Positions 7,989-63,766 of a DNA stretch of 64,000 nt are shown one piece after another. Positions within the stretch are counted from its first letter, which is position 1. Each line of letters begins with the position of its first letter. The stretch covers positions 186,001 to 250,000 of IMG/VR virus record IMGVR_UViG_3300033997_000092; one strand, written 5' to 3'. The notes below the pieces were generated by a model. That model made no database searches, was not told where the DNA came from, and worked only from the letters and a program-made list of their open reading frames with translations. Both the position numbers and the translations under genes were made by a program.

Positions 7989-8528
7989 TTAAATAACGAA
8001 ATTGATTGTCATGTCCGGCATTTTAATCTGTTGGCCTACAACAACATTCAATTGAGACAGTTCAAGATCGGCTCCAGAATCAGCCAAGCCACAAGTACCG
8101 TGAATAATAAAATTCGTTTGGGCCGCAGCGGCTGTACTGTTTGTATAGTCTGAGTTACTAAAACATAGTGTAAAGCAACCAATCGTTCCAACTTGTGTCG
8201 CTTTGAACACATCAGCACGTTTAGAGAATGCCAAGATACGTTGCAGAGGATTATCGCCCAAGTAACGATCATCAAAGTTCAGGAATACCATACGTGCTAA
8301 CTCGGTCTTCCCGTAGCTAGGCATACCTGTAGTAGCATTGAACGGCCATGTACTGTTGATAACCGTACCAGAGCGATGTGATTCATACATAGCTGCGAGT
8401 TGTACATCAGACAATTCGCCTCCTGTCCACAGACTCACTATACAATGGTTATTATTGCCTAAATGAGTTTGGATAGGAGAAGTGAACTGGCCTAACATAA
8501 GGCTCTTGGCCGTAATTGCAAATTCCAT
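7989..8528 (-). CDS. Short-type array paralog S6 (putative virion structural protein)
   Basis: Shared S motifs: SLWTGG near the N-terminus, GTIGCFTLC, GTCGLADSGADLEL. Confidence 0.7.
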   Translation of the reverse strand: MEFAITAKSLMLGQFTSPIQTHLGNNNHCIVSLWTGGELSDVQLAAMYESHRSGTVINSTWPFNATTGMPSYGKTELARMVFLNFDDRYLGDNPLQRILAFSKRADVFKATQVGTIGCFTLCFSNSDYTNSTAAAAQTNFIIHGTCGLADSGADLELSQLNVVVGQQIKMPDMTINFVI

Positions 8529-8540
8529 ACTGGACTCCTA

Positions 8541-9701: not shown

Positions 9702-9710
9702 ATAATCCTG

Positions 9711-10040
9711 TTAAGGATCGATTTCATTTAATACACATAATTGGTAATACGTATAGGTTATGTCTTCCGATCTATACGCTCCCCGAGAACAACGACCCAC
9801 TACTTCCATGATAGGTTCAGCTAATATGCTGTTTATCGTGAATGTTCCTACTACATAAAACTCGAATGTTGGTGTTGTACCATTTGTTTGCCAGTGGTAT
9901 TGATTACCTTCTTCATCAGCGAAGTACCAGTAATGCCTATTAGATGCAGATAGCCTTTTCTTATAGATTACTTGGCCTTGACTTATACCACATACTTGTA
10001 CAGTTTCTTTTTCTTTCCTATATACATGCTGTGTTATCAT
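9711..10040 (-). CDS. Small paralog family D protein (D1)
   Basis: Start MITQHVY overlaps the upstream stop (ATGA); homologous to 6923-7261. Confidence 0.7.
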   Translation of the reverse strand: MITQHVYRKEKETVQVCGISQGQVIYKKRLSASNRHYWYFADEEGNQYHWQTNGTTPTFEFYVVGTFTINSILAEPIMEVVGRCSRGAYRSEDITYTYYQLCVLNEIDP

Positions 10041-10537
10041 TGTCTGTTTTCTTCCCATGCACGGCATCCCATAAGACGTAAAGCAGAATACATTGCCATT
10101 GTTTTACGTTTAGATACTCCATCTGCAATCAAGCCTAGCCTGAAAATCTGATCAGCTTGTTTCTGGTTAAAGAAATCTCCAGATGGATTTGGAACATCAT
10201 GTCTGTATAGCAGATCATGAATTACAGATGCACGTAATCCAGAGCCGAAAGGTGGAAACAGAGACCAAAGGCTACGTGGGCTACTAATCAAATCTGTTCC
10301 GAATCCTTCCAAAGCAACCAAATCTACTGTGCGGAAGTTACACACGTACGGAGATTCAATTACACATTTCTTGTCCATATCCCAGCAAAACTGAAAACCA
10401 AAGTCTTCAACAAGCTCGAATTTATATCCACCTGGGAATGAATACAACTTTAAATCGCCGACAAACACAGGTGCATGCGGTACACCTTGTTTTGTCTCTG
10501 TGACAGTTATTTCATACATAGAAATTGGAGTGGACAT
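10037..10537 (-). CDS. DUF1353-family protein
   Basis: GFGTDLISSPRSLWSLFPP...ASVIHDLLY...ADQIF...MYSALR is the DUF1353 pattern. Start MSTP has SD GGGAG. Confidence 0.8.
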   Translation of the reverse strand: MSTPISMYEITVTETKQGVPHAPVFVGDLKLYSFPGGYKFELVEDFGFQFCWDMDKKCVIESPYVCNFRTVDLVALEGFGTDLISSPRSLWSLFPPFGSGLRASVIHDLLYRHDVPNPSGDFFNQKQADQIFRLGLIADGVSKRKTMAMYSALRLMGCRAWEENRQ

Positions 10538-10556
10538 TGCTGCCCACTCCCTCATA

Positions 10557-11048
10557 TTATGGAACGCGAATTTCCAAATCTGTTATCTTGTAGACTTTGC
10601 CCGATTCAGATAAAGCAGACAGTACCTCAAGATCAGACCCTGAGCCTATATCACCGACACTTCCAACAAACGCTTGGTACACGTTCGCATTAGTTGTATA
10701 CGTCGGGTTGTTAATCGCGCTATCCACATACATAAACACGAACCAATTCAACGCACCTGAGGAGTGCAGTGTGTAATCCTGAGCTAACGCTTCGAGGCTC
10801 CACTTTTTGAAGTTCTTGTTAATGATCTGGACCGTAGCTGTGTTTGGATATGCAGCACTAAGACGTAACGTACCTAGTGCTTTCAAGCTGTTGCTTTGAA
10901 TTACACCAGATGTTTGAATCAGTGCTTCAATCTGAGCTTTGGTCGGCATAGTACCACCGAACAACCAGATTACTTTCTTTGATGCAGATACTACCTGCTC
11001 ATGTCTGGCTGTAGAAAGATGCTTCATACCTAAAGAGAACTTAGCCAT
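10557..11048 (-). CDS. Short-type array paralog S5
   Basis: IWLFGGTMPTKAQ, LNWFVF, GSVGDIGSGSDLE. Confidence 0.7.
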   Translation of the reverse strand: MAKFSLGMKHLSTARHEQVVSASKKVIWLFGGTMPTKAQIEALIQTSGVIQSNSLKALGTLRLSAAYPNTATVQIINKNFKKWSLEALAQDYTLHSSGALNWFVFMYVDSAINNPTYTTNANVYQAFVGSVGDIGSGSDLEVLSALSESGKVYKITDLEIRVP

Positions 11049-11049
11049 A

Positions 11050-11916
11050 TTAAATCTCCGTTACTTCAGGTTTCAAACGGGCATACATCAAAGCAGCCTG
11101 TTGTTGTGGAAGTATCTGTGCTTTGCTTAAACGCACTTCTGCTGTTGTAGCAGGTCCGCCTGCAGTACAGATCAGGAACGGTGTAGATGCTCCTGCTGGC
11201 ACATAGGCGCTGTTGTATGTAACAGGCTTAATGATTGCCCACGTTGGAACAACAGCACTGTTATTTGGATTCACTGAGGTATAAGGAACGAACTTAGTGA
11301 TACCGCAACTTCCTACAGCAAACCGCACTATCAAACGTGTTGCACCTGGAGCAGATACTGGACGTAATACAGTGCTGCCTATTTGGGTAAACAACTCAGT
11401 TTCAGTTGTGCCGTTGTAGGCAAACACGGTGTACTGAGTGTTGCTATCTGCGGTTACAGTAATGTGTGACACATCTGCTGTATTCCATAGATCGAAGTTT
11501 AATTGGTTTGCGCCAGCCGCCGCAGTGAACGCATATTGAAGTCTCGCAGACAGTACATCCAATTTACGTTCCAGGTTTAAGCTTGGTGTTGTTCCAGTTA
11601 AATCACGCATACCTATAGCATACACAGGTACACCGTTTACCTCAGTTTCTGCTTCGTCGCGGCCTGCAGCAGGATAACCATAAAGGCGCTGTGTCTGAGC
11701 AAATTCCATCATGTGTGATGGAGATACAAGTAACGAAGAAGAAACACGTAAAGCCTCTACTGCATTTTGCAGCAAGCCGCTATCTGTGTTTGGGTCAAAT
11801 GATATTGCTTCTTCGGATTCTGGAACTGTACCTGCAAAAACAAACACGTTCCATCCAGAAGTACCTGCATAGTCCTGCATACTCTGCAAGATATTAGAGT
11901 GACAGAATAAAAACAT
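11050..11916 (-). CDS. Long-type array paralog L4
   Basis: VFVFAGTVPES ... VPTWAII ... CTAGG scaffold around a beta-rich insert. Confidence 0.7.
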   Translation of the reverse strand: MFLFCHSNILQSMQDYAGTSGWNVFVFAGTVPESEEAISFDPNTDSGLLQNAVEALRVSSSLLVSPSHMMEFAQTQRLYGYPAAGRDEAETEVNGVPVYAIGMRDLTGTTPSLNLERKLDVLSARLQYAFTAAAGANQLNFDLWNTADVSHITVTADSNTQYTVFAYNGTTETELFTQIGSTVLRPVSAPGATRLIVRFAVGSCGITKFVPYTSVNPNNSAVVPTWAIIKPVTYNSAYVPAGASTPFLICTAGGPATTAEVRLSKAQILPQQQAALMYARLKPEVTEI

Positions 11917-11917
11917 A

Positions 11918-12463
11918 TTAGCCGCCCCATGTGTAGTTGAATGTCAAGTCGTTGCCTTTCAGCACCTTTGACATATCGATTGCACTTCCAGCAAGGACCA
12001 TATCAGCATTGCTGCCAACATCGCCTATAGTACCGATACCAACAAAGTAAGCAGGCTGGCTCGAGGTCATATCAACAGCAGCCGTAGCACAAGTTGCGAA
12101 CAAGAACCAACTAACTGTACCGCCAGAAATTTTAGTAAATTCTTCAGCACGTTCACTCAGAGGGAAACGGAACTTGGTCGGACCTATGTTGTGACCTTGT
12201 AGTGTGTTCTCATAACGGCACCACGCCTTCAACGTACTGCCTAATGCTACTGCCCACTGATTTAACAGAGTCAGGCTGTACTGGCCACGCACTGTACTGA
12301 ACTGAATACCTGAACCGGCAACAGTGCTAAACATAGCCGCTTCAAATTGTGCTTTGGTAGGCATCGGGCCATTATAAATAGCCATCATCTTGCGGTACGC
12401 ACCTGAAGTAACGTAATCAGCGTTTGCTAAAGGTACTAAACCGTCCGTTGCTAAAATTGTCAT
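11918..12463 (-). CDS. Short-type array paralog S4
   Basis: AIYNGPMPTKAQ, GTVSWFLF, GTIGDVGSNADM. Confidence 0.7.
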   Translation of the reverse strand: MTILATDGLVPLANADYVTSGAYRKMMAIYNGPMPTKAQFEAAMFSTVAGSGIQFSTVRGQYSLTLLNQWAVALGSTLKAWCRYENTLQGHNIGPTKFRFPLSERAEEFTKISGGTVSWFLFATCATAAVDMTSSQPAYFVGIGTIGDVGSNADMVLAGSAIDMSKVLKGNDLTFNYTWGG

Positions 12464-12474
12464 GCGAAGGCTCC

Positions 12475-13416
12475 TTACTCTACTTCGTTAACTACGTTGC
12501 CGAACACTTTCAGGTGAACCAGCGAGAAACTATCACTGATGCCTGCACGACGACGATTTAATACAGCTACTTTACCGTCAAGTGGACCACCTGCACTCAG
12601 CACCATAGCAGGCACCTGTGTAGCATCGGCAGACTTGTAAGTTGCTGTTGTTGGGTTAGCTGGAACCAATACACACCACGTTACGTCTGTAGTAGTTTTG
12701 TCGAACGTGTTTGATGGCAGCTCACTCGCAAAGAAACGAATGAAGCGATACTGCAATGTGTTAGCGGCCACTGTACCTGTATCATTCAGGAAACGAACAC
12801 GCCACAGACGCGCACTAATTGGAGCGAATGTAATTTCAATGCCCGCAGCGTTGTATGTTTTCACTGCTACGTTTGATGCCGCTGGAACCCATACAGATCC
12901 ATCGTAGTATTCGACGTTGATGTTGCTGGCATTACGAGTGGTTGCACTCATGTTAGCAAACAGTACCTTGTTGATACTGCACACATCGCCAAAATCAAAT
13001 TGAATGAAACGACCTGTGACTAAGTGTGTCGATGCTGTTGCTGTAACGGCGCTATCCTCTAAGCCATTAACATAGCCAACAGGTTCATCCATACCAGGAA
13101 TGTCAGTAGATATTGCCTGAGGCAAACACTGTATACCTGCAGTACCGTTATTGAGGCGTTCTCCGTGCATTTTCAAAGTAAACAAGGTCGACGCATGTTC
13201 AAAAGCTAACAGTTCTTGGCCGTAACCAGCGCTGTTAACCGCAGTAACACGAATACCAGCAATAGCATTGGCGAAGATACTGTCCATGTTAGCTAACTGG
13301 AATGGAAACGTACCCATAGACTCAGGTACTGTTCCTGACATTAAAAACATATTCCAGGCAGTGCCTCCTTTAAGAAGCATAGACTGAGCTTGAGCAAATT
13401 GTGCGGCTACGTACAT
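12475..13416 (-). CDS. Long-type array paralog L3 with discoidin/F5-8-like insert
   Basis: MFLMSGTVPES scaffold; FIQFDFG..VEYYDGSVW..ISARLWRVRF insert; VTWCVL..LSAGG. Confidence 0.72.
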   Translation of the reverse strand: MYVAAQFAQAQSMLLKGGTAWNMFLMSGTVPESMGTFPFQLANMDSIFANAIAGIRVTAVNSAGYGQELLAFEHASTLFTLKMHGERLNNGTAGIQCLPQAISTDIPGMDEPVGYVNGLEDSAVTATASTHLVTGRFIQFDFGDVCSINKVLFANMSATTRNASNINVEYYDGSVWVPAASNVAVKTYNAAGIEITFAPISARLWRVRFLNDTGTVAANTLQYRFIRFFASELPSNTFDKTTTDVTWCVLVPANPTTATYKSADATQVPAMVLSAGGPLDGKVAVLNRRRAGISDSFSLVHLKVFGNVVNEVE

Positions 13417-13426
13417 AACTCTTACC

Positions 13427-13969
13427 TTATGTCAGTGAGAAATTAAATTCTGAAGTGGATGCTTCCATCAGAACTACAGTGATTGGCGATACAGTTATTT
13501 CCATGGAGGATACATCGCTATAGAATATTTCACGCACTGCAGGTGATGTAGAGAATTGTGATTCACCTTCACCTACCAATGTAATACGTGAATCCAACAA
13601 GCGTCCATCGAGATACTGTTCAGGCGTTACGTTGACTGTGATGTTATTCGCATCATAAGTAGCAATGTTTGACTTATACCCAAGCATTTCATTCAGGTTA
13701 AAGTCTTCAGGTGCACCAAAGAAGTACAGACCTATATAACCGTAGAACAGACTTGTATCTTGATTGAGTGTAGCTTCCGCTTCTTGGAAAACACTCAACG
13801 ATACTTGGATACCATTGATGTCAATGTTCTGGTCGATTTCACTTGTTATAAGTGGGCGGAAGTTAGTGTCTCCTTCCAGTACACCCAACATAGTTGTTGA
13901 GATTGTGTCTGGAAAAAGTACACCAGGCTCGAACCGTTGAGCATAGTAATTATGAACTTGGATAAACAT
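13427..13969 (-). CDS. Array family C protein (C2)
   Basis: N-terminal RFEPGVLF and C-terminal IFYSDV..VSPI are shared with 16090-16431. Confidence 0.6.
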   Translation of the reverse strand: MFIQVHNYYAQRFEPGVLFPDTISTTMLGVLEGDTNFRPLITSEIDQNIDINGIQVSLSVFQEAEATLNQDTSLFYGYIGLYFFGAPEDFNLNEMLGYKSNIATYDANNITVNVTPEQYLDGRLLDSRITLVGEGESQFSTSPAVREIFYSDVSSMEITVSPITVVLMEASTSEFNFSLT

Positions 13970-13972
13970 AAA

Positions 13973-14509
13973 TTACCCCAGCAGGTTACTGATGTTCACA
14001 CGGAAGTCAGCTATACTGTATTTCTTACCTACAGTTACAGCCAGTGAGCCTACTTTAATGTCTTCTGTTGATGCTGGTAATCCTACAGTACAACAGAATA
14101 ATGTTCTGGCACTTGTAGTTGCTGATCCGTGTAAAGCTATTACCATAAGGCCCACATCACCAGCAGCAAGACCTTGCATGAAGTCAGTACGTTGGCTGAA
14201 CAAGAACGCTGCTCCTGAAGGACCTTCATGGCGCTTTTGTGTGAATGACGTCATCGCAGTAATAGCACCCGCAGTTGTTACCACAGAACCCAAGCGAGTT
14301 CGCGTAGACACCAGATTGGTATTCACTAAATCTAAGTTGATAATACCAGTCGTAGCGTTTTTAGCAGTGCCATTTATATAGTTCATTTCAGCAGGAGTAA
14401 TTGCAGGACCTGTGTAAAAGAAAATCGATACACGATCTGTATTCGCTAAATCGTTCCTGTGGAATGGGTACTTCAAGAAACTCAACATCGTCTTATTTGC
14501 TAAAAGCAT
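13973..14509 (-). CDS. Short-type array paralog S3
   Basis: MLLANK, FFYTGP, CTVGLPAS; closest to S2. Confidence 0.7.
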   Translation of the reverse strand: MLLANKTMLSFLKYPFHRNDLANTDRVSIFFYTGPAITPAEMNYINGTAKNATTGIINLDLVNTNLVSTRTRLGSVVTTAGAITAMTSFTQKRHEGPSGAAFLFSQRTDFMQGLAAGDVGLMVIALHGSATTSARTLFCCTVGLPASTEDIKVGSLAVTVGKKYSIADFRVNISNLLG

Positions 14510-15057
14510 TACGACTCTCCTAATAAGTCTGTCAGCCTGACATACATATCATTCACACGGATTACATCGTTGGCTGCAATTGTTGTATTTTCTATCTCAA
14601 TCTCTTTGCCAGATCCAGGTAGACCTACTGTCATAAGTACCGCTGCGTGAATAGGACCGTTGTAGTTGTCGTACAGCATACACAACATTAGTCCAGTCGT
14701 ACCTGCTTGAAAACCTTTCAGTACCGAGGTCACTACTGGCCGCAAACGTAAACAGAACTCGTCTACTGTATTGCCATACGCTTTGTTCACTAACAACTGA
14801 CCGCTAACCGTAGTTCCACTGATAGAAGTGTAGGCTAAGTAACGGCGAATGCTGTTTAAATATGTTGTGAACGCACTGCCTCCTGCCATTGCCCCCGTTC
14901 CAGTTGTAACAGCAGTTTTAAGTGCGGCTAATTCTCCTGCAGTCAGTTCTGGACCTTCGTACAGGTAAGTCACTGCGTAACTTGCAAATGCTCCGCCTGC
15001 TGCCGCCCGGAAAGGATTCATCAAATAGGCAGTCATGCCTTTGTTTGCTAAGAACAT
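14509..15057 (-). CDS. Short-type array paralog S2
   Basis: MFLANK, YLYEGP, MTVGLPGSG. Confidence 0.7.
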   Translation of the reverse strand: MFLANKGMTAYLMNPFRAAAGGAFASYAVTYLYEGPELTAGELAALKTAVTTGTGAMAGGSAFTTYLNSIRRYLAYTSISGTTVSGQLLVNKAYGNTVDEFCLRLRPVVTSVLKGFQAGTTGLMLCMLYDNYNGPIHAAVLMTVGLPGSGKEIEIENTTIAANDVIRVNDMYVRLTDLLGES

Positions 15058-15074
15058 TAGGACTCTCCTATTTA

Positions 15075-16082
15075 TTAGAACAACTGCCCGTAAGCTAAGT
15101 ACAGATCAAACTTACTATCGTTGTTGGCTTGCACAGGAGCGTTGAAGCGCAGACGTCCATTTCCACCAATACCAGAAGCACTTACCAAGAAACAGAAATC
15201 ATCTGTGTCAAACGGGCTATTGCCGTAAGAGTCAATCAGTTTTGCCTTTAAATTTGTCAACACTGTTGCTGATGTGAAATCAGGAACGATAACTGCCCAA
15301 GTAGGAACAGCTAAGTTGTATTGTACATCACCAGCTTCATAATCAAACTTACCGAAGTAGGCAAATGCCATAAGCACGGTACCTGCTGTACCTGACGCCA
15401 GTTTACGAATACGGAAGCGTGTTGCAGTTACTTCTGGGAAGCGAATGATTTGGTAACCTGTTACGTTCAGTACAGAAGTAACCAGCTCTACCCAAGCACT
15501 ACCGTTATAGTATTCGATGACCATCTGACGCATAAACGTGTTTGCAGCAGTACCTTGTTTGATACCGAAGCAGTTAACGTCTATAGGACGATTATATTCA
15601 AATTCAAAAACTTCGTTGGTGTTTGTGCTTACAGTCACATAACTTGTTGTCAGACCTGCGAAGTTTGCTTCGGAACTCTGCTTGTACATAAACAGTTCAA
15701 ACAGTTTGTGGTCACGGTAATCACCATACGCTTTAAAATTCGATGGGCCATAAACCAAGTGATTGGCGAAATTGGTACTTACAACACTTCCGCCTTGATA
15801 CACGTTCACAGTCTCACCAGCATATTTGGCAACTATGTCTGCGCCTTTCAACAAAGAACTACGCTGAGTCAATTGCACTTCAGATACAGATGGATACGAC
15901 AGTGTTGCCAGGAAAGCGTTTTTGCAGTTTTGGATAAGGTTAGCTGCGTTTGGAGCAAAACCAATACCATCGAAATCTGTAGGAGGTGTGCCTTCGAAAG
16001 CATACACCAGCATGTTTGTGTTTGCTGGAAAGTTTACTTGCATACCAGCAATCATTGTTTCAGTTGCGCCAAATACGTGCAT
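15075..16082 (-). CDS. Long-type array paralog L2 with discoidin/F5-8-like insert
   Basis: VYAFEGTPP scaffold; FEFEYNRPIDV..IEYYNGSAWV..VTATRFRIR; VPTWAVI. Confidence 0.72.
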   Translation of the reverse strand: MHVFGATETMIAGMQVNFPANTNMLVYAFEGTPPTDFDGIGFAPNAANLIQNCKNAFLATLSYPSVSEVQLTQRSSLLKGADIVAKYAGETVNVYQGGSVVSTNFANHLVYGPSNFKAYGDYRDHKLFELFMYKQSSEANFAGLTTSYVTVSTNTNEVFEFEYNRPIDVNCFGIKQGTAANTFMRQMVIEYYNGSAWVELVTSVLNVTGYQIIRFPEVTATRFRIRKLASGTAGTVLMAFAYFGKFDYEAGDVQYNLAVPTWAVIVPDFTSATVLTNLKAKLIDSYGNSPFDTDDFCFLVSASGIGGNGRLRFNAPVQANNDSKFDLYLAYGQLF

Positions 16083-16089
16083 GTTTACC

Positions 16090-16431
16090 TCACGATAAGT
16101 TTAACACTATTGTAAAATTACTCGATTGTCCGACCGAAGCAACGATTGGTGTGACACCAGCTTCAAAATCTAAGACATCGCCATAGAAGAATCCATCTAA
16201 CACAACTGGACTCACATTAACAGTGAAGTTAGCAACACTGTCTTGGTAAAACAGATTGTTTTCATTTTGACTTGCATTCGGGAATAAAGGAGCACTCACT
16301 CCTTCGAGAGGCCTCAAAATTCTAAATGTCTTTGGGTCCAGCGCTACAGATACCTCTACTGTCTCACCAAACAAAGCACCAGAATCAAAACCAGGACCAT
16401 AACGTCCACTTGCTTTTACTAAGTTGCTCAT
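16090..16431 (-). CDS. Array family C protein (C1)
   Basis: GFDSGALF and FFYGDV..VTPI are shared with C2. Confidence 0.6.
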   Translation of the reverse strand: MSNLVKASGRYGPGFDSGALFGETVEVSVALDPKTFRILRPLEGVSAPLFPNASQNENNLFYQDSVANFTVNVSPVVLDGFFYGDVLDFEAGVTPIVASVGQSSNFTIVLNLS

Positions 16432-16931
16432 ATCACGTGCCTCACTTTAAAGTTCAATGCACGGTATGTTTGACCTAATGTCATAGATGGATTGTTGATT
16501 TTCAAATCACCATCATCATTTAAGTCCGTTATAGTTCCTTTCATTGAGAACAGTGAATTACCGTTTACGTTGTAGGCTACGTTTGATGCACGGTCATACA
16601 GCAAGAACCAGTCAGGTACTCCAGAGGTCAGTACAGTTACAGGAACTCTGCCTAACTGAAAGTTTATATTCAAGTCAGGTGCACTTCCTATATTTGGATA
16701 GGTTGCTTTATCAATATCGATGTAACCAACTATCTTACCTCCACGTGCAACAATAGCAGAGTACAGTCCTGCAAAGCTGCCGAGAAAAGGATTAGATGTG
16801 TTAGTTATGTAAGCACCAACTTCCTGTGCAGTCATATAACCTTTTTCAATCAACACGAACTGATAACGAAAGCCTGAATTTTTCAAAGGATATTGGTAGA
16901 TTAATGCAGCCGCATCTTTATTCATTCTCAT
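16428..16931 (-). CDS. Short-type array paralog S1
   Basis: Start MRMNK overlaps the L1 stop (ATGA); VPDWFLL, GTITDLNDDGDLKI. Confidence 0.68.
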   Translation of the reverse strand: MRMNKDAAALIYQYPLKNSGFRYQFVLIEKGYMTAQEVGAYITNTSNPFLGSFAGLYSAIVARGGKIVGYIDIDKATYPNIGSAPDLNINFQLGRVPVTVLTSGVPDWFLLYDRASNVAYNVNGNSLFSMKGTITDLNDDGDLKINNPSMTLGQTYRALNFKVRHVI

Positions 16932-17845
16932 GTTGCAGTTGCCTCCAGCTTTATGTCTTCTGTTATGAAAACAATAGGAGTATAAACAGACGGCTCTTCC
17001 CTGTTTGTTTCGCATTCTGATTTATCGAATGCAAATACTGGACACCGAGTTGTTGACCAATCTAACGCAGTAGGATATCCTAAGATATTGTACATGATTG
17101 GACAAAGAAGGATTGTTTGTATTGGACGAGATACGCAGCGTCTCTGGTCTGTTGTAGCGTAGAATGTGTCAATTGACCATCCTACTTGGCCAGCACTAGC
17201 AACAGCAACAGTCAGTTTTATGCCTGAGCATACGCGCTCAACCAATCCACTTACTATATTTGTCCCAGAGCCTACAATCAAACCCAAGTCTTGCCAACTT
17301 CCATTCACAAGACACTCAAGGCGTACTGATGTTGGGCGTTGGTTTGTAGCACTGGCTATACCTGGAGCGTATTTAACATCTTTCACAAAGCACGGTTCAA
17401 ATGTCTGCACTATTTCAGCAGATATGAAATCCGTTCCCCATACAATTGGAATGTTCCTTTGTGGAGCAGCCAAGCTGTAGTGTGGCGTGTAGAATGCGAA
17501 TATGTCTCTTGGGACAGTTGTGCCAAAGTACATTGATTCAGGACAAACACGTATTTCTTGCTGACCGTCGTCACTATAGGCTCCTAAGTGTTTAACCAAA
17601 GGCGCTCCATATGTTGTAGTCAACTTGTTGTAAGATATTGTCCCTAATCTGCCTGCCGCAGACAATGTATGTGAGGCAATGCAATGTTCGGTGAAATACT
17701 TCAGAGCTTCTGGTGAAGCTGGAGATTCCATCAGAATATCCAACTCACTTGTATCCATGAACAATGCAAGCCACGTATAAGCTGACCCAGATTGTCCTGC
17801 TAGTCCATTAGCAATACTTGCGTTCCAGTGAATTAATTCCATCAA
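16928..17845 (-). CDS. Long-type array paralog L1 (most divergent)
   Basis: 305 aa; insert with RLECLVNGSWQDLG...SGIKLTV; first gene of the array. Confidence 0.55.
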   Translation of the reverse strand: MMELIHWNASIANGLAGQSGSAYTWLALFMDTSELDILMESPASPEALKYFTEHCIASHTLSAAGRLGTISYNKLTTTYGAPLVKHLGAYSDDGQQEIRVCPESMYFGTTVPRDIFAFYTPHYSLAAPQRNIPIVWGTDFISAEIVQTFEPCFVKDVKYAPGIASATNQRPTSVRLECLVNGSWQDLGLIVGSGTNIVSGLVERVCSGIKLTVAVASAGQVGWSIDTFYATTDQRRCVSRPIQTILLCPIMYNILGYPTALDWSTTRCPVFAFDKSECETNREEPSVYTPIVFITEDIKLEATAT

Positions 17846-58055: not shown

Positions 58056-58082
58056 AAGAGGGAGCAATTTGCTCCCTCTTTT
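58056..58082 (+). terminator. Intrinsic terminator
   Basis: AAGAGGGAGC-aattt-GCTCCCTCTT then TT, after the stop at 58051. Confidence 0.85.
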
Positions 58083-58195: not shown

Positions 58196-58225
58196 TTGAC
58201 ACCCACCCATATACTCTGCTATAAT
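58196..58225 (+). promoter_or_regulatory. Consensus sigma70 (early) promoter with extended -10
   Basis: TTGACA (58196-58201), 18-nt spacer, TG-c-TATAAT (58220-58225). Confidence 0.9.
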
Positions 58226-58257: not shown

Positions 58258-58551
58258 ATGCTGCCTATACAGATAGCTACTGCAATCGTGATAAACAACA
58301 ACGTACACCGCGCAATATCAGGCGTTAACAGAACACGTTTGGGTATTGGAGCTGGTGGCTTTGTTGAACACCGAATCGTTCTTACTCCGCTCGGTCAGAA
58401 GTGCATGGACTTAGTGAAGCAGGACAGAGAGGCAATGCGTTCGGTTATTTACCAACAGCGTGTTGCTGAATTGAAAGCGCGTGGTATTACAAGACCGGGC
58501 GATATTATGAAATATACATACGATATGTTTGGAGGAAAAGTAAGATGGTAA
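58258..58551 (+). CDS. Hypothetical early protein
   Basis: ATG with SD AGGAG just downstream of the promoter. Confidence 0.75.
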   Translation: MLPIQIATAIVINNNVHRAISGVNRTRLGIGAGGFVEHRIVLTPLGQKCMDLVKQDREAMRSVIYQQRVAELKARGITRPGDIMKYTYDMFGGKVRW

Positions 58552-58991
58552 ACTCAAAAGATCTGAAAGCTGGTTCATTAATCGAAGCACAGTTCAACGA
58601 CGGTCCGAATCGTTCAGGTATCGTAACTGAACTCATACACCAGAAAGGAGCAAAAACTGAAGGTGAACTGTTCGGACTACGCGCCTTGTTTTATATGGAG
58701 GAGTTTAAAGCACACTGGAATATTTCTATTGAAACTTCTCAGGTAGTGTTTGTTGCTCCTACGCAGCCGGATTTACCTGCGTTACTTGACGAAGCCAAAC
58801 AAGCTGTAATGCGCTGGACATGCACTATCGACGGCGAAGAATCTGTGCCACTGAGCTTTGCTTCTATGACAATGCCAGAAGACGGCTTCAACCTAAGCAA
58901 AGAAGAAGCGGACAAACTAAAGTCGATGCAAGTCGGCGATAGTTTCGTTGCTGGTGATGAAGGTCAAGCACTGATTAAACGTGTAGCCTGA
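58545..58991 (+). CDS. Early protein, SH3/KOW-like N-terminus plus shared C-terminal module
   Basis: DLKAGSLIEAQF N-terminus; ends LSKEEADKLKSMQVGDSF...IKRVA. Confidence 0.65.
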   Translation: MVNSKDLKAGSLIEAQFNDGPNRSGIVTELIHQKGAKTEGELFGLRALFYMEEFKAHWNISIETSQVVFVAPTQPDLPALLDEAKQAVMRWTCTIDGEESVPLSFASMTMPEDGFNLSKEEADKLKSMQVGDSFVAGDEGQALIKRVA

Positions 58992-59003
58992 GTTTGATAT
59001 TAG

Positions 59004-59025
59004 TAGGCATTCCACAGAGTGCCTG
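59004..59025 (+). promoter_or_regulatory. Conserved intergenic RNA hairpin, copy 1
   Basis: TAGGCATT-ccacag-AGTGCCTG. Confidence 0.6.
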
Positions 59026-59057
59026 CACTATATGATTCTCAACACAAGGAAAACATT

Positions 59058-59492
59058 ATGTTCGATAACCAAAGCAAAGAAGTAAAATCAATCGCTACAC
59101 GTTTGGCAAAAATCACCAAGCCTCAAATGGCACTTGAACGTATGGCTCAGATTCTAAAAAGCAAAGGCATTAATGGTTATCCGCGTATAGGCCATTATGT
59201 ACCAGACATCGGATTTATGATTCCATCCACTGTTCCTGGTTCTGAGTACATAACTGTACCTCTTGTGCCGAAAGTACACGAACACATCAAAGGCCTTATG
59301 GAGAATCACAAAGGCTTCATTGTGTTGCGCCACAGACCCTTTTCTCTATTAGCTGGGGTTGCTTACCGTTCATCTGATGCGGTCATTGATGAACATGGTG
59401 TAGTACATACAGATAAACTTACATTCAACTGTGAGCGAGTAATGACACTCAGCTTAAACTTAGGCCCACGTTCTTCAAACGGAGATTTATAA
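59058..59492 (+). CDS. Hypothetical early protein
   Basis: ATG with SD AAGGAA; the track used upstream GTG 59019. Confidence 0.7.
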   Translation: MFDNQSKEVKSIATRLAKITKPQMALERMAQILKSKGINGYPRIGHYVPDIGFMIPSTVPGSEYITVPLVPKVHEHIKGLMENHKGFIVLRHRPFSLLAGVAYRSSDAVIDEHGVVHTDKLTFNCERVMTLSLNLGPRSSNGDL

Positions 59493-60061
59493 TGTCAGAT
59501 GCACCAGCAAAATTTTTACCTGTTAAAGGTCGCGTATACACAACTAGCCAGATCGACAATGCGTTGGATCTACGAGACAGTCCTCATTTAGGTTTCTACA
59601 ACATCGACAAGGTAAAGGATGTTGTTCAGGATAGTCATTTGGCTGTCAATCTCAGCACTCTGCCTGGCTGGAAGGACCTGCGCTGGATATTTATTCGTGA
59701 AACACACGAATGGATTCCAATCTTCCAGATCGTGGAAGAAGATGAACCGAAGCTGTTAAAGCTGCTTCGGGAAAGCGATACTGAAGGTGAAGACGAAGAA
59801 GCCGTGTACTACCCACACATACCAGAGGGATTTGATGAAAAGGGCAGACCAGTTAAACCTGTGCATGTTCCTAAGACGTACACGTTGTACGATAAAGAAC
59901 GGCATGTAGACACCGAAGAATCTCGTGGTCCGTTCAACTTACTGTCTCTGATTCACACCACTGATTGGTCTGACGAGGAGTTTGACAAAATCACCGATTT
60001 GACTGTTGGTCAAGTCGTTGAATTTGCCGAAGGTCGTCTGGTAGTAACTCGCGTGAGTTAA
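59492..60061 (+). CDS. Early protein with shared C-terminal module
   Basis: Ends WSDEEFDKITDLTVGQVV...VVTRVS. Confidence 0.7.
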   Translation: MSDAPAKFLPVKGRVYTTSQIDNALDLRDSPHLGFYNIDKVKDVVQDSHLAVNLSTLPGWKDLRWIFIRETHEWIPIFQIVEEDEPKLLKLLRESDTEGEDEEAVYYPHIPEGFDEKGRPVKPVHVPKTYTLYDKERHVDTEESRGPFNLLSLIHTTDWSDEEFDKITDLTVGQVVEFAEGRLVVTRVS

Positions 60062-60062
60062 G

Positions 60063-60097
60063 ATTACTAATGGGCATTGTGTTCAGTGTCCATTGTT
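60063..60097 (+). promoter_or_regulatory. Conserved intergenic RNA hairpin, copy 2
   Basis: ATTACTAATGGGCATT-gtgttc-AGTGTCCATTGTT. Confidence 0.65.
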
Positions 60098-60122
60098 AAT
60101 ACTCAAACAAAGGTAACAGGAT

Positions 60123-61271
60123 ATGCTACAACATTTTATAGTCTGCTTGATAGCAGGCTTCTTTATGTCGTTCTCGCGTTGGTTCAAACACAAAGATGCA
60201 CCAGTTGACCCAAATGTACCAAAACACAGGCGGCCCCGACTAGAGGTAGTCAACTTTGAGAAGATAACACTCAAGGAATTTGGTATAAGCGCAATAGGCA
60301 ATGTGTTTGTTGCTGCATTCAGTATGATATTCTTCTTCATCTACTTGACTACAGCCGCATCCGACTTTGAGATTTTGAATGGCCGTGTAACAGACAAACA
60401 GCGTGATGAAGTCAGTTGTAGCCATTCATACTCCTGCCCGCCTTGCCGTGACGTATGTACAAAACGCAGTGACGGAAGTAGGAGTTGTACACGGGAATGT
60501 TCAACGTGTTATAAACATCGTTATGATGTGGACTGGGATGTGTTTACTACAGTAGGTACATTCACTATATCGCGTGGTCCTAACAATGAACAGGGATTAG
60601 ATATGCCTCCGTACTGGGCGTCTTTACAAATAGGTGACCCAGCCTCGGCAGAACATACTTATGAAAACTTTTTGCTTATCGGCCAGAACAGCCTGAACTT
60701 CAAAGCCGAAAGTGTTGAAGAACGATTTGCAGGTTCGTTACACAAATACCCTGAAGTGTACAACTACTTTGATTATAACCGTGTACTCAACACAACCAAA
60801 GCAGGAACAAGCTGGCTCAATGATAAACTCAATCGTTGGTTATCTGTCAAAGGCAGTCAGAAGCAGCTCAACATCATATACGTGTTGACTGAACAGAACC
60901 CTGAATACTTCTATGCCTTAATGTCGAAGTGGTCTGGCGGTAAAAAGAACGACTTGATTATAGTGATTGGTATGGACAACACAGGAAAAGAGATTCTTTG
61001 GTTCAATGCAAACACGTACGGTAAAGGCATGAACAACCGCGAACTACTGACCGAACTGAAGTTTGCTTCTGTTGGTAAGCCGTTTGACGTAAGCTTGGTA
61101 GACAAGCATTTGGAATTAGTAGATGAAAAGTTTGTGCGTTTACCTGCAGAAACTTTCGCTCAGAAGAAATCTGAAGTTCAGATACCGCTGTGGTTCTCGC
61201 TTATCATGGCATCCTTAAATATGTTAGTTAGCTATTTCATTTCACGTAAAATGAGGGAAGTAAATTTATGA
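60123..61271 (+). CDS. Inner-membrane protein with large periplasmic region (Cys-rich finger, TPM-like domain)
   Basis: Two N-terminal hydrophobic segments, CSHSYSCPPCRDVC...C..ECSTC, QLNIIYV...WSGGKKND.IIVIG, C-terminal TM. Confidence 0.6.
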   Translation: MLQHFIVCLIAGFFMSFSRWFKHKDAPVDPNVPKHRRPRLEVVNFEKITLKEFGISAIGNVFVAAFSMIFFFIYLTTAASDFEILNGRVTDKQRDEVSCSHSYSCPPCRDVCTKRSDGSRSCTRECSTCYKHRYDVDWDVFTTVGTFTISRGPNNEQGLDMPPYWASLQIGDPASAEHTYENFLLIGQNSLNFKAESVEERFAGSLHKYPEVYNYFDYNRVLNTTKAGTSWLNDKLNRWLSVKGSQKQLNIIYVLTEQNPEYFYALMSKWSGGKKNDLIIVIGMDNTGKEILWFNANTYGKGMNNRELLTELKFASVGKPFDVSLVDKHLELVDEKFVRLPAETFAQKKSEVQIPLWFSLIMASLNMLVSYFISRKMREVNL

Positions 61272-61849
61272 AAACGCAAAAAGGTTCGGCTCTGGGTATT
61301 ATTCTGGGTGTGTTGGGTTTATTGTTTTTGGTTGTTGCTCTGATTGCAGCAATTTTCTTTCACTACAAAGACAGAGGCTCCGACTTCCAGGTCAAAATCG
61401 GTTCATCTTACCGTCTGGCTCAATCTTCATTGAGTAAGTACACACTCAAGATGCAGGATTTGAAGGGCCTGAAGAATATGGACACGCAGGCACTGAAGGA
61501 TCTGTTAACTTCATCCAACACTTCACGTTACGGTGCAGACGGTTCTCAGGCTGCGGTACAGTGGTTGAAAGAAAACAACATTCCTGTCAACAACGAACTG
61601 GTAACAAAAATGGCTGTGTTGATTGACTCAGGCCGTGACGAATACGGTGTACAGCAGGAAAACTTAAATGCCGACTGTACCACATTCAAATATGAACTGG
61701 GTCGTAGCTGGAGCGGTCTGTGGTATTCAATCGCTGGTCGTCCTGATGAAAGCAACAAAAAAGAATTCAGCCTGTCTATGTGTGACCTGGTTCTGGATGC
61801 TGCTACAGTAGAAGCATACGAAACCAAACAAGCGAAGTCCGTGTTCTAA
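61268..61849 (+). CDS. Membrane-anchored helical protein (LemA-like), partner of the preceding gene
   Basis: N-terminal TM, helical body, SGLWYSIAG; ATGA-coupled. Confidence 0.5.
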   Translation: MKTQKGSALGIILGVLGLLFLVVALIAAIFFHYKDRGSDFQVKIGSSYRLAQSSLSKYTLKMQDLKGLKNMDTQALKDLLTSSNTSRYGADGSQAAVQWLKENNIPVNNELVTKMAVLIDSGRDEYGVQQENLNADCTTFKYELGRSWSGLWYSIAGRPDESNKKEFSLSMCDLVLDAATVEAYETKQAKSVF

Positions 61850-61850
61850 C

Positions 61851-61885
61851 ATTACTAATAGGCATTCATAGTAGTGCCTATTGTT
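61851..61885 (+). promoter_or_regulatory. Conserved intergenic RNA hairpin, copy 3
   Basis: ATTACTAATAGGCATT-catagt-AGTGCCTATTGTT. Confidence 0.65.
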
Positions 61886-62285
61886 GATGAACGAAAAAGG
61901 AAAACTAATCATGTTAGTAGATGCAAAGAAACTCAAAGCAGTAAAATTCTTGTCGATGCTGGACCAACTATACATTGACATTCTTGGTGCAGAGCCGAAT
62001 ACTATGGAACCAAACTCTCTGGTAGTGTTCACGCAGTTTGCCGACTTAATAGATGACAATACGGAACAAAACATCCGTAACTTGTTTGAAGGCACGATTG
62101 ACCTTGCGTGGACAATACAAGAAAACAGAACATCGGTTCCGTTTTATTCGCAGGGCATTGCTGTATTCATTATCTATTTACTTAAACGTCACTGCAACCG
62201 TTTGAAAGCAGACTGGCCATTAGAGTGGCGTTTGCTTTCAGCCGTCGCTACAAACATCGGCGTATCATTGCGCGAAGGCGACTAA
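61881..62285 (+). CDS. Hypothetical protein (start uncertain, ATG ~61911 has SD AAGGAA)
   Basis: ORF fills the gap between hairpin copy 3 and the next gene. Confidence 0.65.
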   Translation: MLMNEKGKLIMLVDAKKLKAVKFLSMLDQLYIDILGAEPNTMEPNSLVVFTQFADLIDDNTEQNIRNLFEGTIDLAWTIQENRTSVPFYSQGIAVFIIYLLKRHCNRLKADWPLEWRLLSAVATNIGVSLREGD

Positions 62286-62313
62286 ATCAAATCTAAATTT
62301 TATCGAGGTATTT

Positions 62314-62946
62314 ATGAAAGTTTTAAGAATTGCTGTTGAAGGCAAACGTGTAGAAAAACCGCGCTGGACAAAAGAGACACCTGAAGAAAGACTGGCGAGT
62401 GAGCGTTTACCTACGTTCACCGTGTTCGGTACTTCTGACAGAACAGACCCACGTATGCACATGGATATTATGGCAACGGCATCCATAATCCGTGGTGCTG
62501 CTGGTGCCCTGGGCGTGTCTCCTGAAGTGTTTACGTCTGAGTTTAACTTTGAACGAAGTGACCACGAAGACAATATGCACACAATACACTTCTTACCAAA
62601 AGTAAAGCCTGGTGTACTGGCGCATCTGCAATTTCCTGGCGATGACGAACCCCATCTAGTAATGGTTATTGCTGAAGTTCTGGAACGTCAAGGTGTAGTT
62701 TGGGAAAAACACGAACCTAATCGAGAAATCCGTCTTCTCAACAAGATTGATTTGCCTGATACAAACGCCCGTATACAATTTCCACAAGTTGACGGTTGGG
62801 TAGTAGCCAGTGTTATCAAAGAAGTAAAAAACACCAACGCCAGATCCATCCACAGTGCGAAATGGGAACCAGGTTTGGTGATTGGCAGTGATTGGTTCTT
62901 TGTAACGCATGAATCTCTGACACCTATTGATTTTGCTCAATGGTGA
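62314..62946 (+). CDS. Hypothetical protein
   Basis: 210 aa, SD GAGGT. Confidence 0.75.
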   Translation: MKVLRIAVEGKRVEKPRWTKETPEERLASERLPTFTVFGTSDRTDPRMHMDIMATASIIRGAAGALGVSPEVFTSEFNFERSDHEDNMHTIHFLPKVKPGVLAHLQFPGDDEPHLVMVIAEVLERQGVVWEKHEPNREIRLLNKIDLPDTNARIQFPQVDGWVVASVIKEVKNTNARSIHSAKWEPGLVIGSDWFFVTHESLTPIDFAQW

Positions 62947-62949
62947 TTT

Positions 62950-63126
62950 ATGTCAAACAGTGAAAAATCATTTGTAGTATCTACGCCGTTTAGCGAAGTG
63001 GTTATGTCACACCGTGATGTGCTGCGTAAATTCAAGTTCACGCCTGCTCAGAGTAAAACATTCTCTGGATTAGGCATCAATTCAACGATGTCAGTAGGCA
63101 AAACTAACATCAAGCGTAAGGAATAA
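62950..63126 (+). CDS. 58-aa stand-alone copy of the shared C-terminal module (not in ORF track)
   Basis: SD GGTG; MSNSEKSFVVSTPFSEVVMSHRDVLRKFKFTPAQSKTFSGLGINSTMSVGKTNIKRKE*; fills the gap exactly. Confidence 0.65.
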   Translation: MSNSEKSFVVSTPFSEVVMSHRDVLRKFKFTPAQSKTFSGLGINSTMSVGKTNIKRKE

Positions 63127-63130
63127 CAAA

Positions 63131-63766
63131 ATGAAACCAGCTAACAATGCTCCTATGTACGCTGCACTGTATCCTGAATTGGCTGAGATATGCCGTAGCT
63201 TTGGTTATGCGCTTGCTGTTCACGGCACTATGTCACGCGATTTTGATATTGTGGCAATACCGTGGGCAGAAACAATGTCAGGCGGACCTGAAGACGTAGT
63301 TAAAGCGATCTGCAAACGCTTTGCAGTAAACAAAGTCTCGGGCGACCCAGTGATTATGAATCACGGACGAATCTGCTACAATTTGGCACTAATGGGTGAG
63401 TTCTTTTTCGACCTCAGTTTCATAGCAACTGATTCTCCTGCTGTTAAGCTACGCGCAGGCCTGAACCAAGCTATCGAACTACTGGCTACTGCACTGCATG
63501 AGCCTGAGCAGATCACCGAAGAAGAAATCCATGAGCTGCGTACTCTGGAACGTGAATCGGTCGGTGACTCTACTCCGATATGTGTACGACGTTTCACGTT
63601 GACTGTTGACGAAGATGCCGAAGATGTCTCTTATGCTGCTATCAGAAAAAGAGCCGATGCTTTGGACCTGAATGATGAAGATCTGACAAACATTGCTCGC
63701 CTTGATGTTCAGGAAGAGCTTCCGATTCACGAAAATCCAATAGTTATAATCACCCGTATTGCATAA
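63131..63766 (+). CDS. Minimal nucleotidyltransferase-like domain plus shared C-terminal module
   Basis: YALAVHGTMSRDFDIVAIPW (hG[ST]..DxD) and a third acidic motif FFDLSF. Confidence 0.55.
   Translation: MKPANNAPMYAALYPELAEICRSFGYALAVHGTMSRDFDIVAIPWAETMSGGPEDVVKAICKRFAVNKVSGDPVIMNHGRICYNLALMGEFFFDLSFIATDSPAVKLRAGLNQAIELLATALHEPEQITEEEIHELRTLERESVGDSTPICVRRFTLTVDEDAEDVSYAAIRKRADALDLNDEDLTNIARLDVQEELPIHENPIVIITRIA

What the first reader, a model, noticed from the sequence alone, without database searches (positions are those of the whole stretch)
58815..63766. One ~55-aa module ends three unrelated early proteins and also exists alone
Seen, with identical spacing in the core: LSKEEADKLKSMQVGDSF..IKRVA* (58545 gene), WSDEEFDKITDLTVGQVV..VTRVS* (59492 gene), LNDEDLTNIARLDVQEEL..ITRIA* (63131 gene) and FTPAQSKTFSGLGINSTM..IKRKE* (unannotated 62950-63126). 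The N-terminal partners differ: SH3-like, unknown, nucleotidyltransferase-like. Inference: a portable localisation or oligomerisation tag that brings different early effectors to one host target or compartment. The basic stand-alone copy might be the partner or competitor of the acidic fused copies.
Basis: seen in the sequence. Interest (0 to 1): 0.6.

Follow-up and report, generated by a model that had tools for sequence, protein, structure and literature searches.

The report
Portable 60-residue domain on phage proteins
Three unrelated proteins of an uncultured giant phage end in the same small 60-residue domain, which in other phages is a free-standing early protein, and a basic 58-residue neighbour gene appears to be a charge-reversed cousin; the family is undescribed and its job is unknown.

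Summary
The C-terminal ~60 residues of genes 58545-58991, 59492-60061 and 63131-63766 are homologous copies of one small domain, predicted as strand-strand-helix-helix-strand-strand (pLDDT 96-98 in the 59492 copy). A profile built only from relatives of the 59492 tail found 35 proteins among 1.84 billion. Most are free-standing acidic proteins of 55-68 aa. One is ORF3 of the T7-like Pantoea phage Nufs112, beside the left terminal repeat. That profile, which contains no sequence from the other two genes, ranks their tails as the next best hits among about 7000 ORFs of the 261-kb genome (E 0.002 and 0.012; noise starts at 1.4). The fusions are real evolutionary events. In one relative the N-domain and the module of the 59492 gene are separate adjacent genes. 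Orthologues of the 63131 gene in two relatives stop exactly where the module begins. The unannotated ORF 62950-63126 is a real gene (14 synonymous to 1 non-synonymous change against a relative), basic (pI about 10), with the same predicted topology and a remote profile match. Neither Pfam, PHROGs nor the PDB holds the family. Function is inferred only: most likely a protein-docking module of early takeover proteins. Oligomerisation and a shared target are untested.

The parts
58803..58988 (+). Module copy A: C-terminal ~62 aa (residues ~87-148) of gene 58545-58991
   Evidence: The independent family HMM hits it at E 0.0019 at the very C-terminus. hhalign P is 6.8e-5 with 4 orthologues. The tail is conserved in orthologues on L007, L004 and L009.
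58545..58802 (+). N-terminal partner of copy A (~86 aa), no known family
   Evidence: No Pfam or PHROG hit. No tblastn relative in GenBank phages. Orthologues occur only in close metagenomic relatives.
59873..60058 (+). Module copy B: C-terminal 62 aa (residues 128-189) of gene 59492-60061; the canonical form of the family
   Evidence: AF2 model: strands 130-134 and 145-148, helices 150-154 and 161-168, strands 175-178 and 183-187, with pLDDT 96-98. A profile of this tail finds 35 proteins, mostly free 55-68-aa proteins.
59492..59872 (+). N-terminal partner of copy B (~115 aa domain plus linker), widespread in jumbo phages without the module
   Evidence: tblastn finds it in 75 phage records. 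Alexandravirus homologues are 135 aa and lack the module. In L011 it is a separate 111-aa gene next to a free module gene. Resemblance to S1/OB folds is weak, Z about 3.3.
63560..63763 (+). Module copy C: C-terminal 68 aa (residues 144-211) of gene 63131-63766, a lineage-specific addition
   Evidence: The family HMM gives E 0.012 and hhalign P is 1.1e-4. Orthologues in L004 (146 aa) and L009 (145 aa) end where this segment starts. Only two close relatives keep the fusion.
63131..63559 (+). N-terminal partner of copy C: phrog_35913 domain (residues 1-99) plus helical linker
   Evidence: PHROG hit at 2.6e-28. It is a free ~100-aa protein in many phages, and is fused to a different C-terminal extension in L014. 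G-[ST], D-x-D and a later D are invariant in 7 homologues. No PDB or Pfam match.
62950..63126 (+). Free-standing basic 58-aa gene, a probable charge-reversed distant member of the module family
   Evidence: 14 synonymous to 1 non-synonymous differences against L006. Orthologues in L006, L009, L004 and L011. pI 10.0-10.4 against a family median of 4.4. AF2 with its own 5 orthologues gives pLDDT 90.5 and the same order of elements. hhalign P is 2e-4. It shares structural neighbours with copy B. Plain HMMs do not detect it.
58196..58225 (+). Perfect sigma-70 consensus promoter upstream of the block that holds copies A and B
   Evidence: 12 of 12 consensus matches with a TG extension. It is one of only four such sites in 261 kb, all on the + strand.
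58056..58080 (+). Terminator-like hairpin closing the upstream gene, just before the promoter
   Evidence: 11-bp stem with 6 G-C pairs, followed by a T-rich tail.

Best explanation
The shared segment is a previously undescribed, autonomously folding domain of about 60 residues, predicted as two strands, two helices, two strands. Its default form is a free acidic protein of 55-68 aa, encoded among the small early-type genes of diverse tailed phages.

In this uncultured jumbo-phage lineage, gene fusion has joined it to the C-termini of three unrelated proteins in separate events:
- Copy B arose by joining two genes that are still separate neighbours in a relative.
- Copy C was added after the split from relatives whose orthologue stops at the junction.
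- Copy A is present in all orthologues seen.

The adjacent basic 58-aa gene is a distant, charge-reversed paralogue with the same fold.

Mechanism, inferred and not shown: the domain is a protein-binding (docking) unit of early host-takeover proteins. When fused, it tethers the N-terminal domain to whatever the free form binds. Because the three copies have diverged strongly, their partners may differ.
For: Homology:
- The independent family HMM ranks copies A and C directly after B among all genome ORFs.
- hhalign P values are 7e-5 to 2e-4, with clean shuffle and decoy controls.
- Reciprocal weak hits occur between the A-type and C-type profiles and free members.

Fold:
- AF2 gives pLDDT 96-98 for the B module and 90.5 for ORF 62950. 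The order and register of secondary-structure elements are the same.
- Both models match the same 58-aa Pectobacterium phage CBB protein at TM 0.83 and 0.81, rmsd 1.4 and 1.5 A.
- By my count, the two models share 19 of their top-50 BFVD hits, 22 of their top-50 PDB neighbours, and the same Atlas cluster.

Free form is the norm:
- 27 of 35 significant hits are 55-68 aa.
- Other layouts exist: tandem paralogues in L013, a two-copy protein P0039, and an N-terminal copy in P0036.

Fusion events.

Early setting:
- Nufs112 ORF3 lies right after the left terminal repeat of a T7-like genome.
- A perfect sigma-70 promoter lies upstream of copies A and B.
- Free copies sit in one-directional arrays of small unknown genes on large phage contigs.
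Against: - No binding partner is known, and nothing shows binding directly.
- The single co-fold attempt gave no answer.
- Copies A, B and C are only about 20-25% identical and do not share the family's conserved Trp. A single common target is therefore doubtful.
- E-values for A and C are modest (0.002 and 0.012) and rest on short alignments.
- The early timing is inferred from a promoter consensus and from genome position in another phage. There is no expression data, and no RNA run holds this phage.
Confidence: 0.55

Rival explanations
1. The module is a self-sufficient small effector, for example an acidic inhibitor or mimic that blocks a host factor. The fusions are by-products of tight gene packing: loss of a stop and spacer between neighbouring genes. 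They are kept because co-expression is harmless or convenient. The N-terminal domains are not targeted anywhere by it.
For: - The free form dominates.
- Copy B's two halves are separate neighbours in L011.
- Copy C is a very recent addition that relatives do without.
- Alexandravirus homologues of the B partner work without the module.
- The family is strongly acidic, with a median pI of 4.4, like several known small early inhibitors. That comparison is from my own knowledge of T7 Ocr and similar proteins.
Against: - Three fusions of the same small family, always at the C-terminus, sit within 5 kb of one genome. That is more than neutral accidents would be expected to give.
- Fused tails are conserved under selection down to 52% overall identity.
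Confidence: 0.25
2. The module is a homo- or hetero-dimerisation unit. Fused proteins pair with each other or with free copies, and the basic ORF 62950 pairs by charge with the acidic copies, as partner or competitor.
For: - P0039 holds two copies in one chain, and L013 has three tandem paralogous genes.
- The basic family (+5 to +7) and the acidic family (about -5 to -8 in the copies examined here) have the same fold. They occur together in the window and in each relative for which both were looked for (window, L006, L004, L009, L011).
Against: - The co-fold of the B module with ORF 62950 scored 0.00, which the tool says is no evidence either way.
- Gene order between the basic gene and the acidic copies is not fixed among relatives.
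- Homodimerisation was not tested.
Confidence: 0.15
3. The resemblance of copies A and C, and of ORF 62950, to the family is convergent or due to chance. It reflects only a common helix-plus-hairpin pattern in short acidic tails.
For: - Pairwise phmmer E-values are 4-6, and leave-one-out HMMs mostly fail.
- Many ORF pairs reach similar raw tail scores.
- ORF 62950 is invisible to plain HMMs.
Against: - The independent profile ranks A and C first after B, with a 100-fold gap to noise.
- Shuffle and real-family decoy controls are clean.
- The register, the terminal position and the length all agree.
- The full-length alignment includes the first strand.
- ORF 62950 folds to the same topology from its own alignment alone.
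Confidence: 0.05

Closest known systems
Unnamed small phage proteins in BFVD, e.g. A0A1L2CU91 (Pectobacterium phage CBB, 58 aa) and A0A7T3NA17 (Serratia phage Rovert, 60 aa)
   Same: Same size and same predicted fold. TM is 0.83 and 0.81 with rmsd 1.4 and 1.5 A against the B module and ORF 62950, at 24-26% identity to B. Several paralogues occur per genome in Stenotrophomonas phages.
   Different: All are uncharacterised, so they say nothing about function. Only one Foldseek E-value passes 0.001, because the domain is so short.
Dockerin modules of cellulosomal enzymes (analogy of logic only)
   Same: A module of about 60-70 residues at the end of many unrelated proteins, which docks them onto a common partner.
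   Different: No sequence or fold relation, and no Pfam dockerin hit. Dockerins are duplicated calcium-binding helix pairs. No cohesin-like partner is known here.
Shared C-terminal tails of phage replication and transcription proteins (T4 clamp-binding tails; acidic C-termini of T7 gp2.5 and gp4). From my own knowledge.
   Same: Different phage proteins carry a similar C-terminal element that brings them to one hub protein.
   Different: Those are short unstructured peptides of about 6-20 residues. This is a folded 60-residue domain that also exists as a free protein.
FKBP/parvulin-type and trigger-factor PPIase domains; TrmI N-terminal domain; I-HmuI residues 114-172 (PDB neighbours)
   Same: Partial overlap of a small sheet packed with two helices. 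Z is 3-4.8 over 48-63 residues for both models.
   Different: Z stays below 5 and rmsd is mostly 3-4.5 A. The PPIase domains are larger, and there is no sequence signal. This is a common arrangement, not a family match.
SpoVT/AbrB-MazE swapped-hairpin domains (a lead recalled from the 'helix, G-D/E, hairpin' pattern)
   Same: Similar local pattern of a short helix followed by a G-[DE]-x-hydrophobic hairpin.
   Different: One member hits Pfam MazE_antitoxin at only E 0.29. No AbrB or MazE chain appears among the structural neighbours. The family is acidic, not DNA-binding basic.

Membership tests
   Copy B scores 6e-24, copy A 0.0019 and copy C 0.012 against about 7000 ORFs, with the next hit at 1.4. 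hhalign P values are 6.8e-5 and 1.1e-4. For ORF 62950 only hhalign matches (P 2e-4); the plain HMM does not.
New free/fused small-domain family | Predicted strand-strand-helix-helix-strand-strand topology in about 60 residues | tested here: met
   Met for copy B and ORF 62950, which share structural neighbours.
New free/fused small-domain family | Acidic charge and the conserved T-D-W-S-D-E-E central motif | tested here: inconclusive
   Copy B has the motif. Copies A and C are acidic (pI 4.4) but have Leu in place of Trp. ORF 62950 is basic (pI 10.4) and lacks the acidic residues.
Dockerin | Pfam dockerin profile; paired calcium-binding repeats | tested here: not met
   No Pfam hit for any copy or family member.
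SpoVT/AbrB-MazE | Pfam profile match and swapped-hairpin fold | tested here: not met
   Best hit is E 0.29, in one of 36 members. The fold is absent from the neighbour lists.
FKBP/parvulin PPIase | Full PPIase domain and a clear structural match | tested here: not met
   Z is 3-4 and rmsd about 4 A over about 60 residues of larger domains. No Pfam rotamase or FKBP hit.
Pol-beta-type nucleotidyltransferase (for the N-domain of gene 63131) | G-[ST] turn, D-x-D and a third acidic residue, plus a profile or fold match | tested here: inconclusive
   G32-[ST]33, D37-x-D39 and D94 are invariant in 7 homologues. There is no Pfam or PDB sequence match, and the domain was not folded.
S1/OB fold (for the N-domain of gene 59492) | Clear structural match to S1/OB domains | tested here: inconclusive
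   Z is only 3.0-3.4 to exosome, eIF2-alpha and RNase R S1 domains.

The most novel reading that the evidence does not exclude
The acidic modules and the basic 58-aa protein form a matched pair of one fold. The free basic protein, possibly bound to nucleic acid, would be the hub onto which the three acidic-tagged early proteins and the free acidic copies dock by charge-complementary heterodimerisation. This would be a phage-encoded docking system built from a single duplicated mini-domain.
Probability: 0.1. Interest if true: 0.75.

Novelty: new member of a known kind. Interest (0 to 1): 0.5.

Why it matters
Most small early genes of phages are unexplained. This work defines a family with a confident predicted fold and free, tandem, fused and charge-reversed forms. 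It occurs in phages from T7-like podoviruses to jumbo phages, and it is absent from Pfam, PHROGs and the PDB.

The fusion and fission events link the module to three otherwise orphan proteins. They also point to cultured systems where it can be studied: Pantoea phage Nufs112 ORF3 and the 58-aa protein of Pectobacterium phage CBB. If the module proves to be a docking unit, it would show how phages recombine takeover functions by swapping one small tag.

Tried and rejected
- An HMM of the three tails alone, leave-one-out HMMs and pairwise phmmer were too weak to decide.
- Raw Smith-Waterman tail scores are not exceptional genome-wide.
- Megablast of the region against GenBank phages found no match. 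The search for related loci with gene 58545 found nothing.
- Pfam, PHROGs and PDB sequence searches for the module, its family and the partners found nothing usable.
- Foldseek and VIA searches of the PDB gave no match above Z 4.8.
- The ESM Atlas look-up on the copy C tail used a low-confidence Atlas model and was uninformative. The feature search gave nothing.
- Complex prediction of the B module with ORF 62950 returned no answer, which is neither support nor evidence against.
- The region search for other C-type tails found only one close relative.
- The sequencing-run search found no RNA run from an infection.
- The SpoVT/AbrB idea and the C-terminal degron idea were dropped. The first has no profile or fold match, and the last residues are not conserved across the family.
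- phiRSL1 ORF063, which lies next to a B-partner homologue, is a basic helical protein and not a module.
Full report
**Setting.** The window is bases 186001-250000 of a single 261,032-bp contig. Sequencing-run look-up traces it to a subsurface metagenome, with relatives in wastewater, biofilm and drinking-water samples. Protein matches place it among jumbo phages: Alexandravirus phages of Erwinia and Dickeya, PaBG, phiRSL1 and the Vibrio VP4B group. No close DNA relative is in the GenBank phage set. The region of the finding is a one-directional block of + strand genes.

**Is the observation in the sequence?** Yes. The N-terminal parts of the three longer proteins show no similarity to one another and have no paralogues in the genome.

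**Is it more than chance?**
- Evidence from within the genome alone is suggestive but weak. Among the last 36 residues of 929 ORFs, the three tails are each other's rank 1-3 matches. However, 2138 of 431,056 pairs reach the lowest of these scores.
- Pairwise phmmer E-values are 4-6, and only one of three leave-one-out HMMs recovers the omitted tail, at E 0.095.
- An HMM of the three tails finds no other ORF, and does not find ORF 62950.

**Bringing in relatives.**
- A word-index search found five orthologues of gene 59492 at 92-52% identity. All keep the tail nearly unchanged.
- Their contigs (L004-L010) also gave orthologues of gene 58545 with its tail. On L004 they gave a free 65-aa gene, 3021-3215, that is essentially the module alone.
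- A profile of the 59492-type tails was searched exhaustively against 1.84 billion representative proteins. It returned 35 hits with E below 0.001.
- Of these, 27 are free proteins of 55-68 aa. They share an N-terminal K-Y/F-x-hydrophobic strand, a variable loop, a hydrophobic L-x-x-L stretch, the motif T-D-W-S-D-E-E, a G-[EQD] turn and a final V-x-R-V.
- Other layouts also occur: two copies in one chain (P0039), an N-terminal copy with a C-terminal extension (P0036), and a 182-aa fusion of the 59492 type (P0015).
- Two large repeat proteins (P0010, P0038) match through many weak repeats. I do not count them as members.

**The decisive test.**
- An HMM was built only from these free proteins and the 59492-type orthologues, so it holds nothing from genes 58545 or 63131. 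It was run against every stop-to-stop ORF of the genome.
- After gene 59492 itself (6e-24), the next hits are the tail of gene 58545 (E 0.0019) and the tail of gene 63131 (E 0.012). Both lie at the extreme C-terminus and align to the same profile positions. Noise begins at E 1.4.
- With small orthologue alignments, hhalign gives P 6.8e-5 for the 58545 type, 1.1e-4 for the 63131 type, and 1.1e-4 between those two. The last alignment includes the first strand of the module.
- None of 200 column-shuffled versions of each alignment came near the observed scores: maxima were 14-15.6 against 22.8-24.7 observed.
- Among 38 real gene families shared by this genome and the fetched loci, the four candidates score 129, 25.1, 22.0 and 20.8 against the family profile. 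All others score 12.5 or less.
- Reciprocal HMMs of the A and C types hit each other or free members first, though weakly.

**The fourth copy.**
- ORF 62950-63126 is not called as a gene on the relatives' contigs, but it is real. Against the 92% relative it shows 14 synonymous changes and one non-synonymous change.
- It has orthologues on L006, L009, L004 and the distant L011.
- The proteins are basic, with pI 10.0-10.4 and net charge +5 to +7. The module family has a median pI of 4.4.
- Plain HMMs do not link it to the family. It stands with copies A and C in the decoy test.
- Folded from its own five sequences alone, it gives mean pLDDT 90.5, with strands 7-11 and 16-20, helices 21-28 and 32-39, and strands 46-49 and 52-56.
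- Gene 59492, folded with 41 sequences, gives mean pLDDT 90.6. Its module has strands 130-134 and 145-148, helices 150-154 and 161-168, and strands 175-178 and 183-187. The order is the same, and the elements coincide in the hhalign register.
- Both models match the same 58-aa protein of Pectobacterium phage CBB, at TM 0.83 and 0.81 with rmsd 1.4 and 1.5 A.
- By my count of the printed lists, the two models share 19 of their top-50 viral neighbours and 22 of their top-50 PDB neighbours. They also share one 98-aa Atlas cluster.
- I therefore accept ORF 62950 as a probable distant member with reversed charge. Confidence is lower than for copies A and C on sequence grounds, but higher on fold grounds.

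**How the fusions arose.**
- tblastn of the window's genes against the fetched loci shows that on L011 the partner domain of gene 59492 is a 111-aa gene. It is followed, after a spacer holding five stop codons, by a free 68-aa module gene.
- The orthologues of gene 63131 on L004 (146 aa) and L009 (145 aa) match residues 1-143 and stop there. The window's protein continues for 68 more residues, which are the module.
- Only two close relatives have that fusion.
- The same N-domain carries a different, helical extension on L014 and is a bare ~100-aa protein in many phages.
- Alexandravirus homologues of the 59492 partner are 135 aa. They end just after a stretch that resembles the module's first strand, which may be a remnant.
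- At least two fusion events (B and C) are therefore traceable. Copy A is fused in all four orthologues seen.

**Setting of the free copies.**
- They lie in one-directional arrays of small unknown genes on phage contigs of about 40-200 kb.
- One such array, on L013, has three tandem paralogues.
- In GenBank, ORF3 of Pantoea phage Nufs112 (Autographiviridae) is a canonical 60-aa member at 1194-1376, directly after the 410-bp left terminal repeat. From general knowledge of T7-like genomes, that position is the host-polymerase-transcribed early region. The paper on that phage gives the gene no function (PMC9915841).
- In the window, a terminator-like hairpin (58056-58080) is followed by a perfect, TG-extended sigma-70 promoter (58196-58225). 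This lies upstream of the block that holds copies A and B.
- Only four perfect sites exist in the whole genome, all on the + strand. About 0.1 would be expected by chance (my estimate). This supports early, host-polymerase transcription. There is no expression data.

**What it is not.**
- Pfam, PHROGs and PDB sequence searches are blank for the module and its family.
- Structural searches of the PDB give nothing above Z 4.8. The lists are dominated by partial overlaps with FKBP/parvulin-type domains, the TrmI N-domain and part of I-HmuI, which the tool's own notes class as common arrangements.
- A recalled likeness to SpoVT/AbrB domains failed both the profile test and the fold test.

**Mechanism.**
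- Shown: there is a portable, independently folding domain family that is free, tandem or fused, and it is under purifying selection in both free and fused forms.
- Inferred: it acts by binding another macromolecule. The reasons are that it is too small and too variable on its surface for catalysis, that it is acidic, and that phages keep it both alone and attached to different domains. My preferred reading is a docking unit of early takeover proteins.
- The main rival is that the free protein is the functional unit and the fusions are by-products of tight gene packing.
- A dimerisation role, including acid-base pairing with ORF 62950, is possible. The one co-fold I could run gave no answer.

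**Limits.**
- The E-values for A and C are modest.
- The host is unknown.

Noticed in passing
window 58056-58080 and 58196-58225: A strong terminator-like hairpin is followed by a perfect TG-extended sigma-70 consensus promoter. It is one of only four perfect sites in the 261-kb genome, all on the + strand. The others are at genome 1685, 170118 and 254912.
   Followed up: partly
window 62950-63126: This unannotated 58-aa ORF is a conserved, basic (pI about 10), confidently folding gene. It has orthologues in four related contigs, and its changes against the nearest relative are almost all synonymous.
   Followed up: yes
L002:4998-5405 and L003:4998-5402 (Erwinia phage pEa_SNUABM_22, Dickeya phage AD1): The Alexandravirus homologues of gene 59492 are 135 aa. 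They end right after a Y-T-x-Y-D-K stretch that matches the first strand of the module, so they may hold a remnant of a lost module.
   Followed up: no
L013:2206-2886: Three tandem small genes (64, 64 and 65 aa) are diverged paralogues of the free module. This shows local duplication and fast divergence of the family.
   Followed up: partly
P0010 (823 aa, metagenomic): A fibre-like protein has eight repeats of about 48 aa. The repeat core (T-T-x-W-G-L-M-S-D-E-Q-F-D-K-L) resembles the module's central motif. Whether this is homology or convergence is unknown.
   Followed up: no
L018:2282-2641 (Pseudomonas phage Cygsa01 gene 96): This gene is annotated as 119 aa. A complete free-type module starts at an internal Met at residue 59, so this is either another fusion with an N-terminal partner or a misplaced start.
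   Followed up: no
window 63131-63559: The N-domain of gene 63131 (phrog_35913) keeps G-[ST], D-x-D and a later Asp invariant in seven homologues, like a minimal nucleotidyltransferase. It carries different C-terminal additions in different phages: none, a helical extension on L014, or the module here.
   Followed up: partly
window 60123-61849: Genes 60123-61271 (phrog_2087) and 61268-61849 (phrog_1383, labelled virion structural protein) lie between the module-bearing genes. Both appear to start with hydrophobic, membrane-like segments.
   Followed up: no
window 7992-17021, - strand: Six ORFs of about 180-190 aa have mutually similar C-terminal tails, seen in the all-against-all tail comparison. 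They look like an array of paralogues.
   Followed up: no
L001:2983-3618 (Ralstonia phage phiRSL1 ORF062/ORF063): The homologue of the 59492 partner domain is followed, in the same frame after one stop, by a basic helical 92-aa ORF that is not a module.
   Followed up: partly
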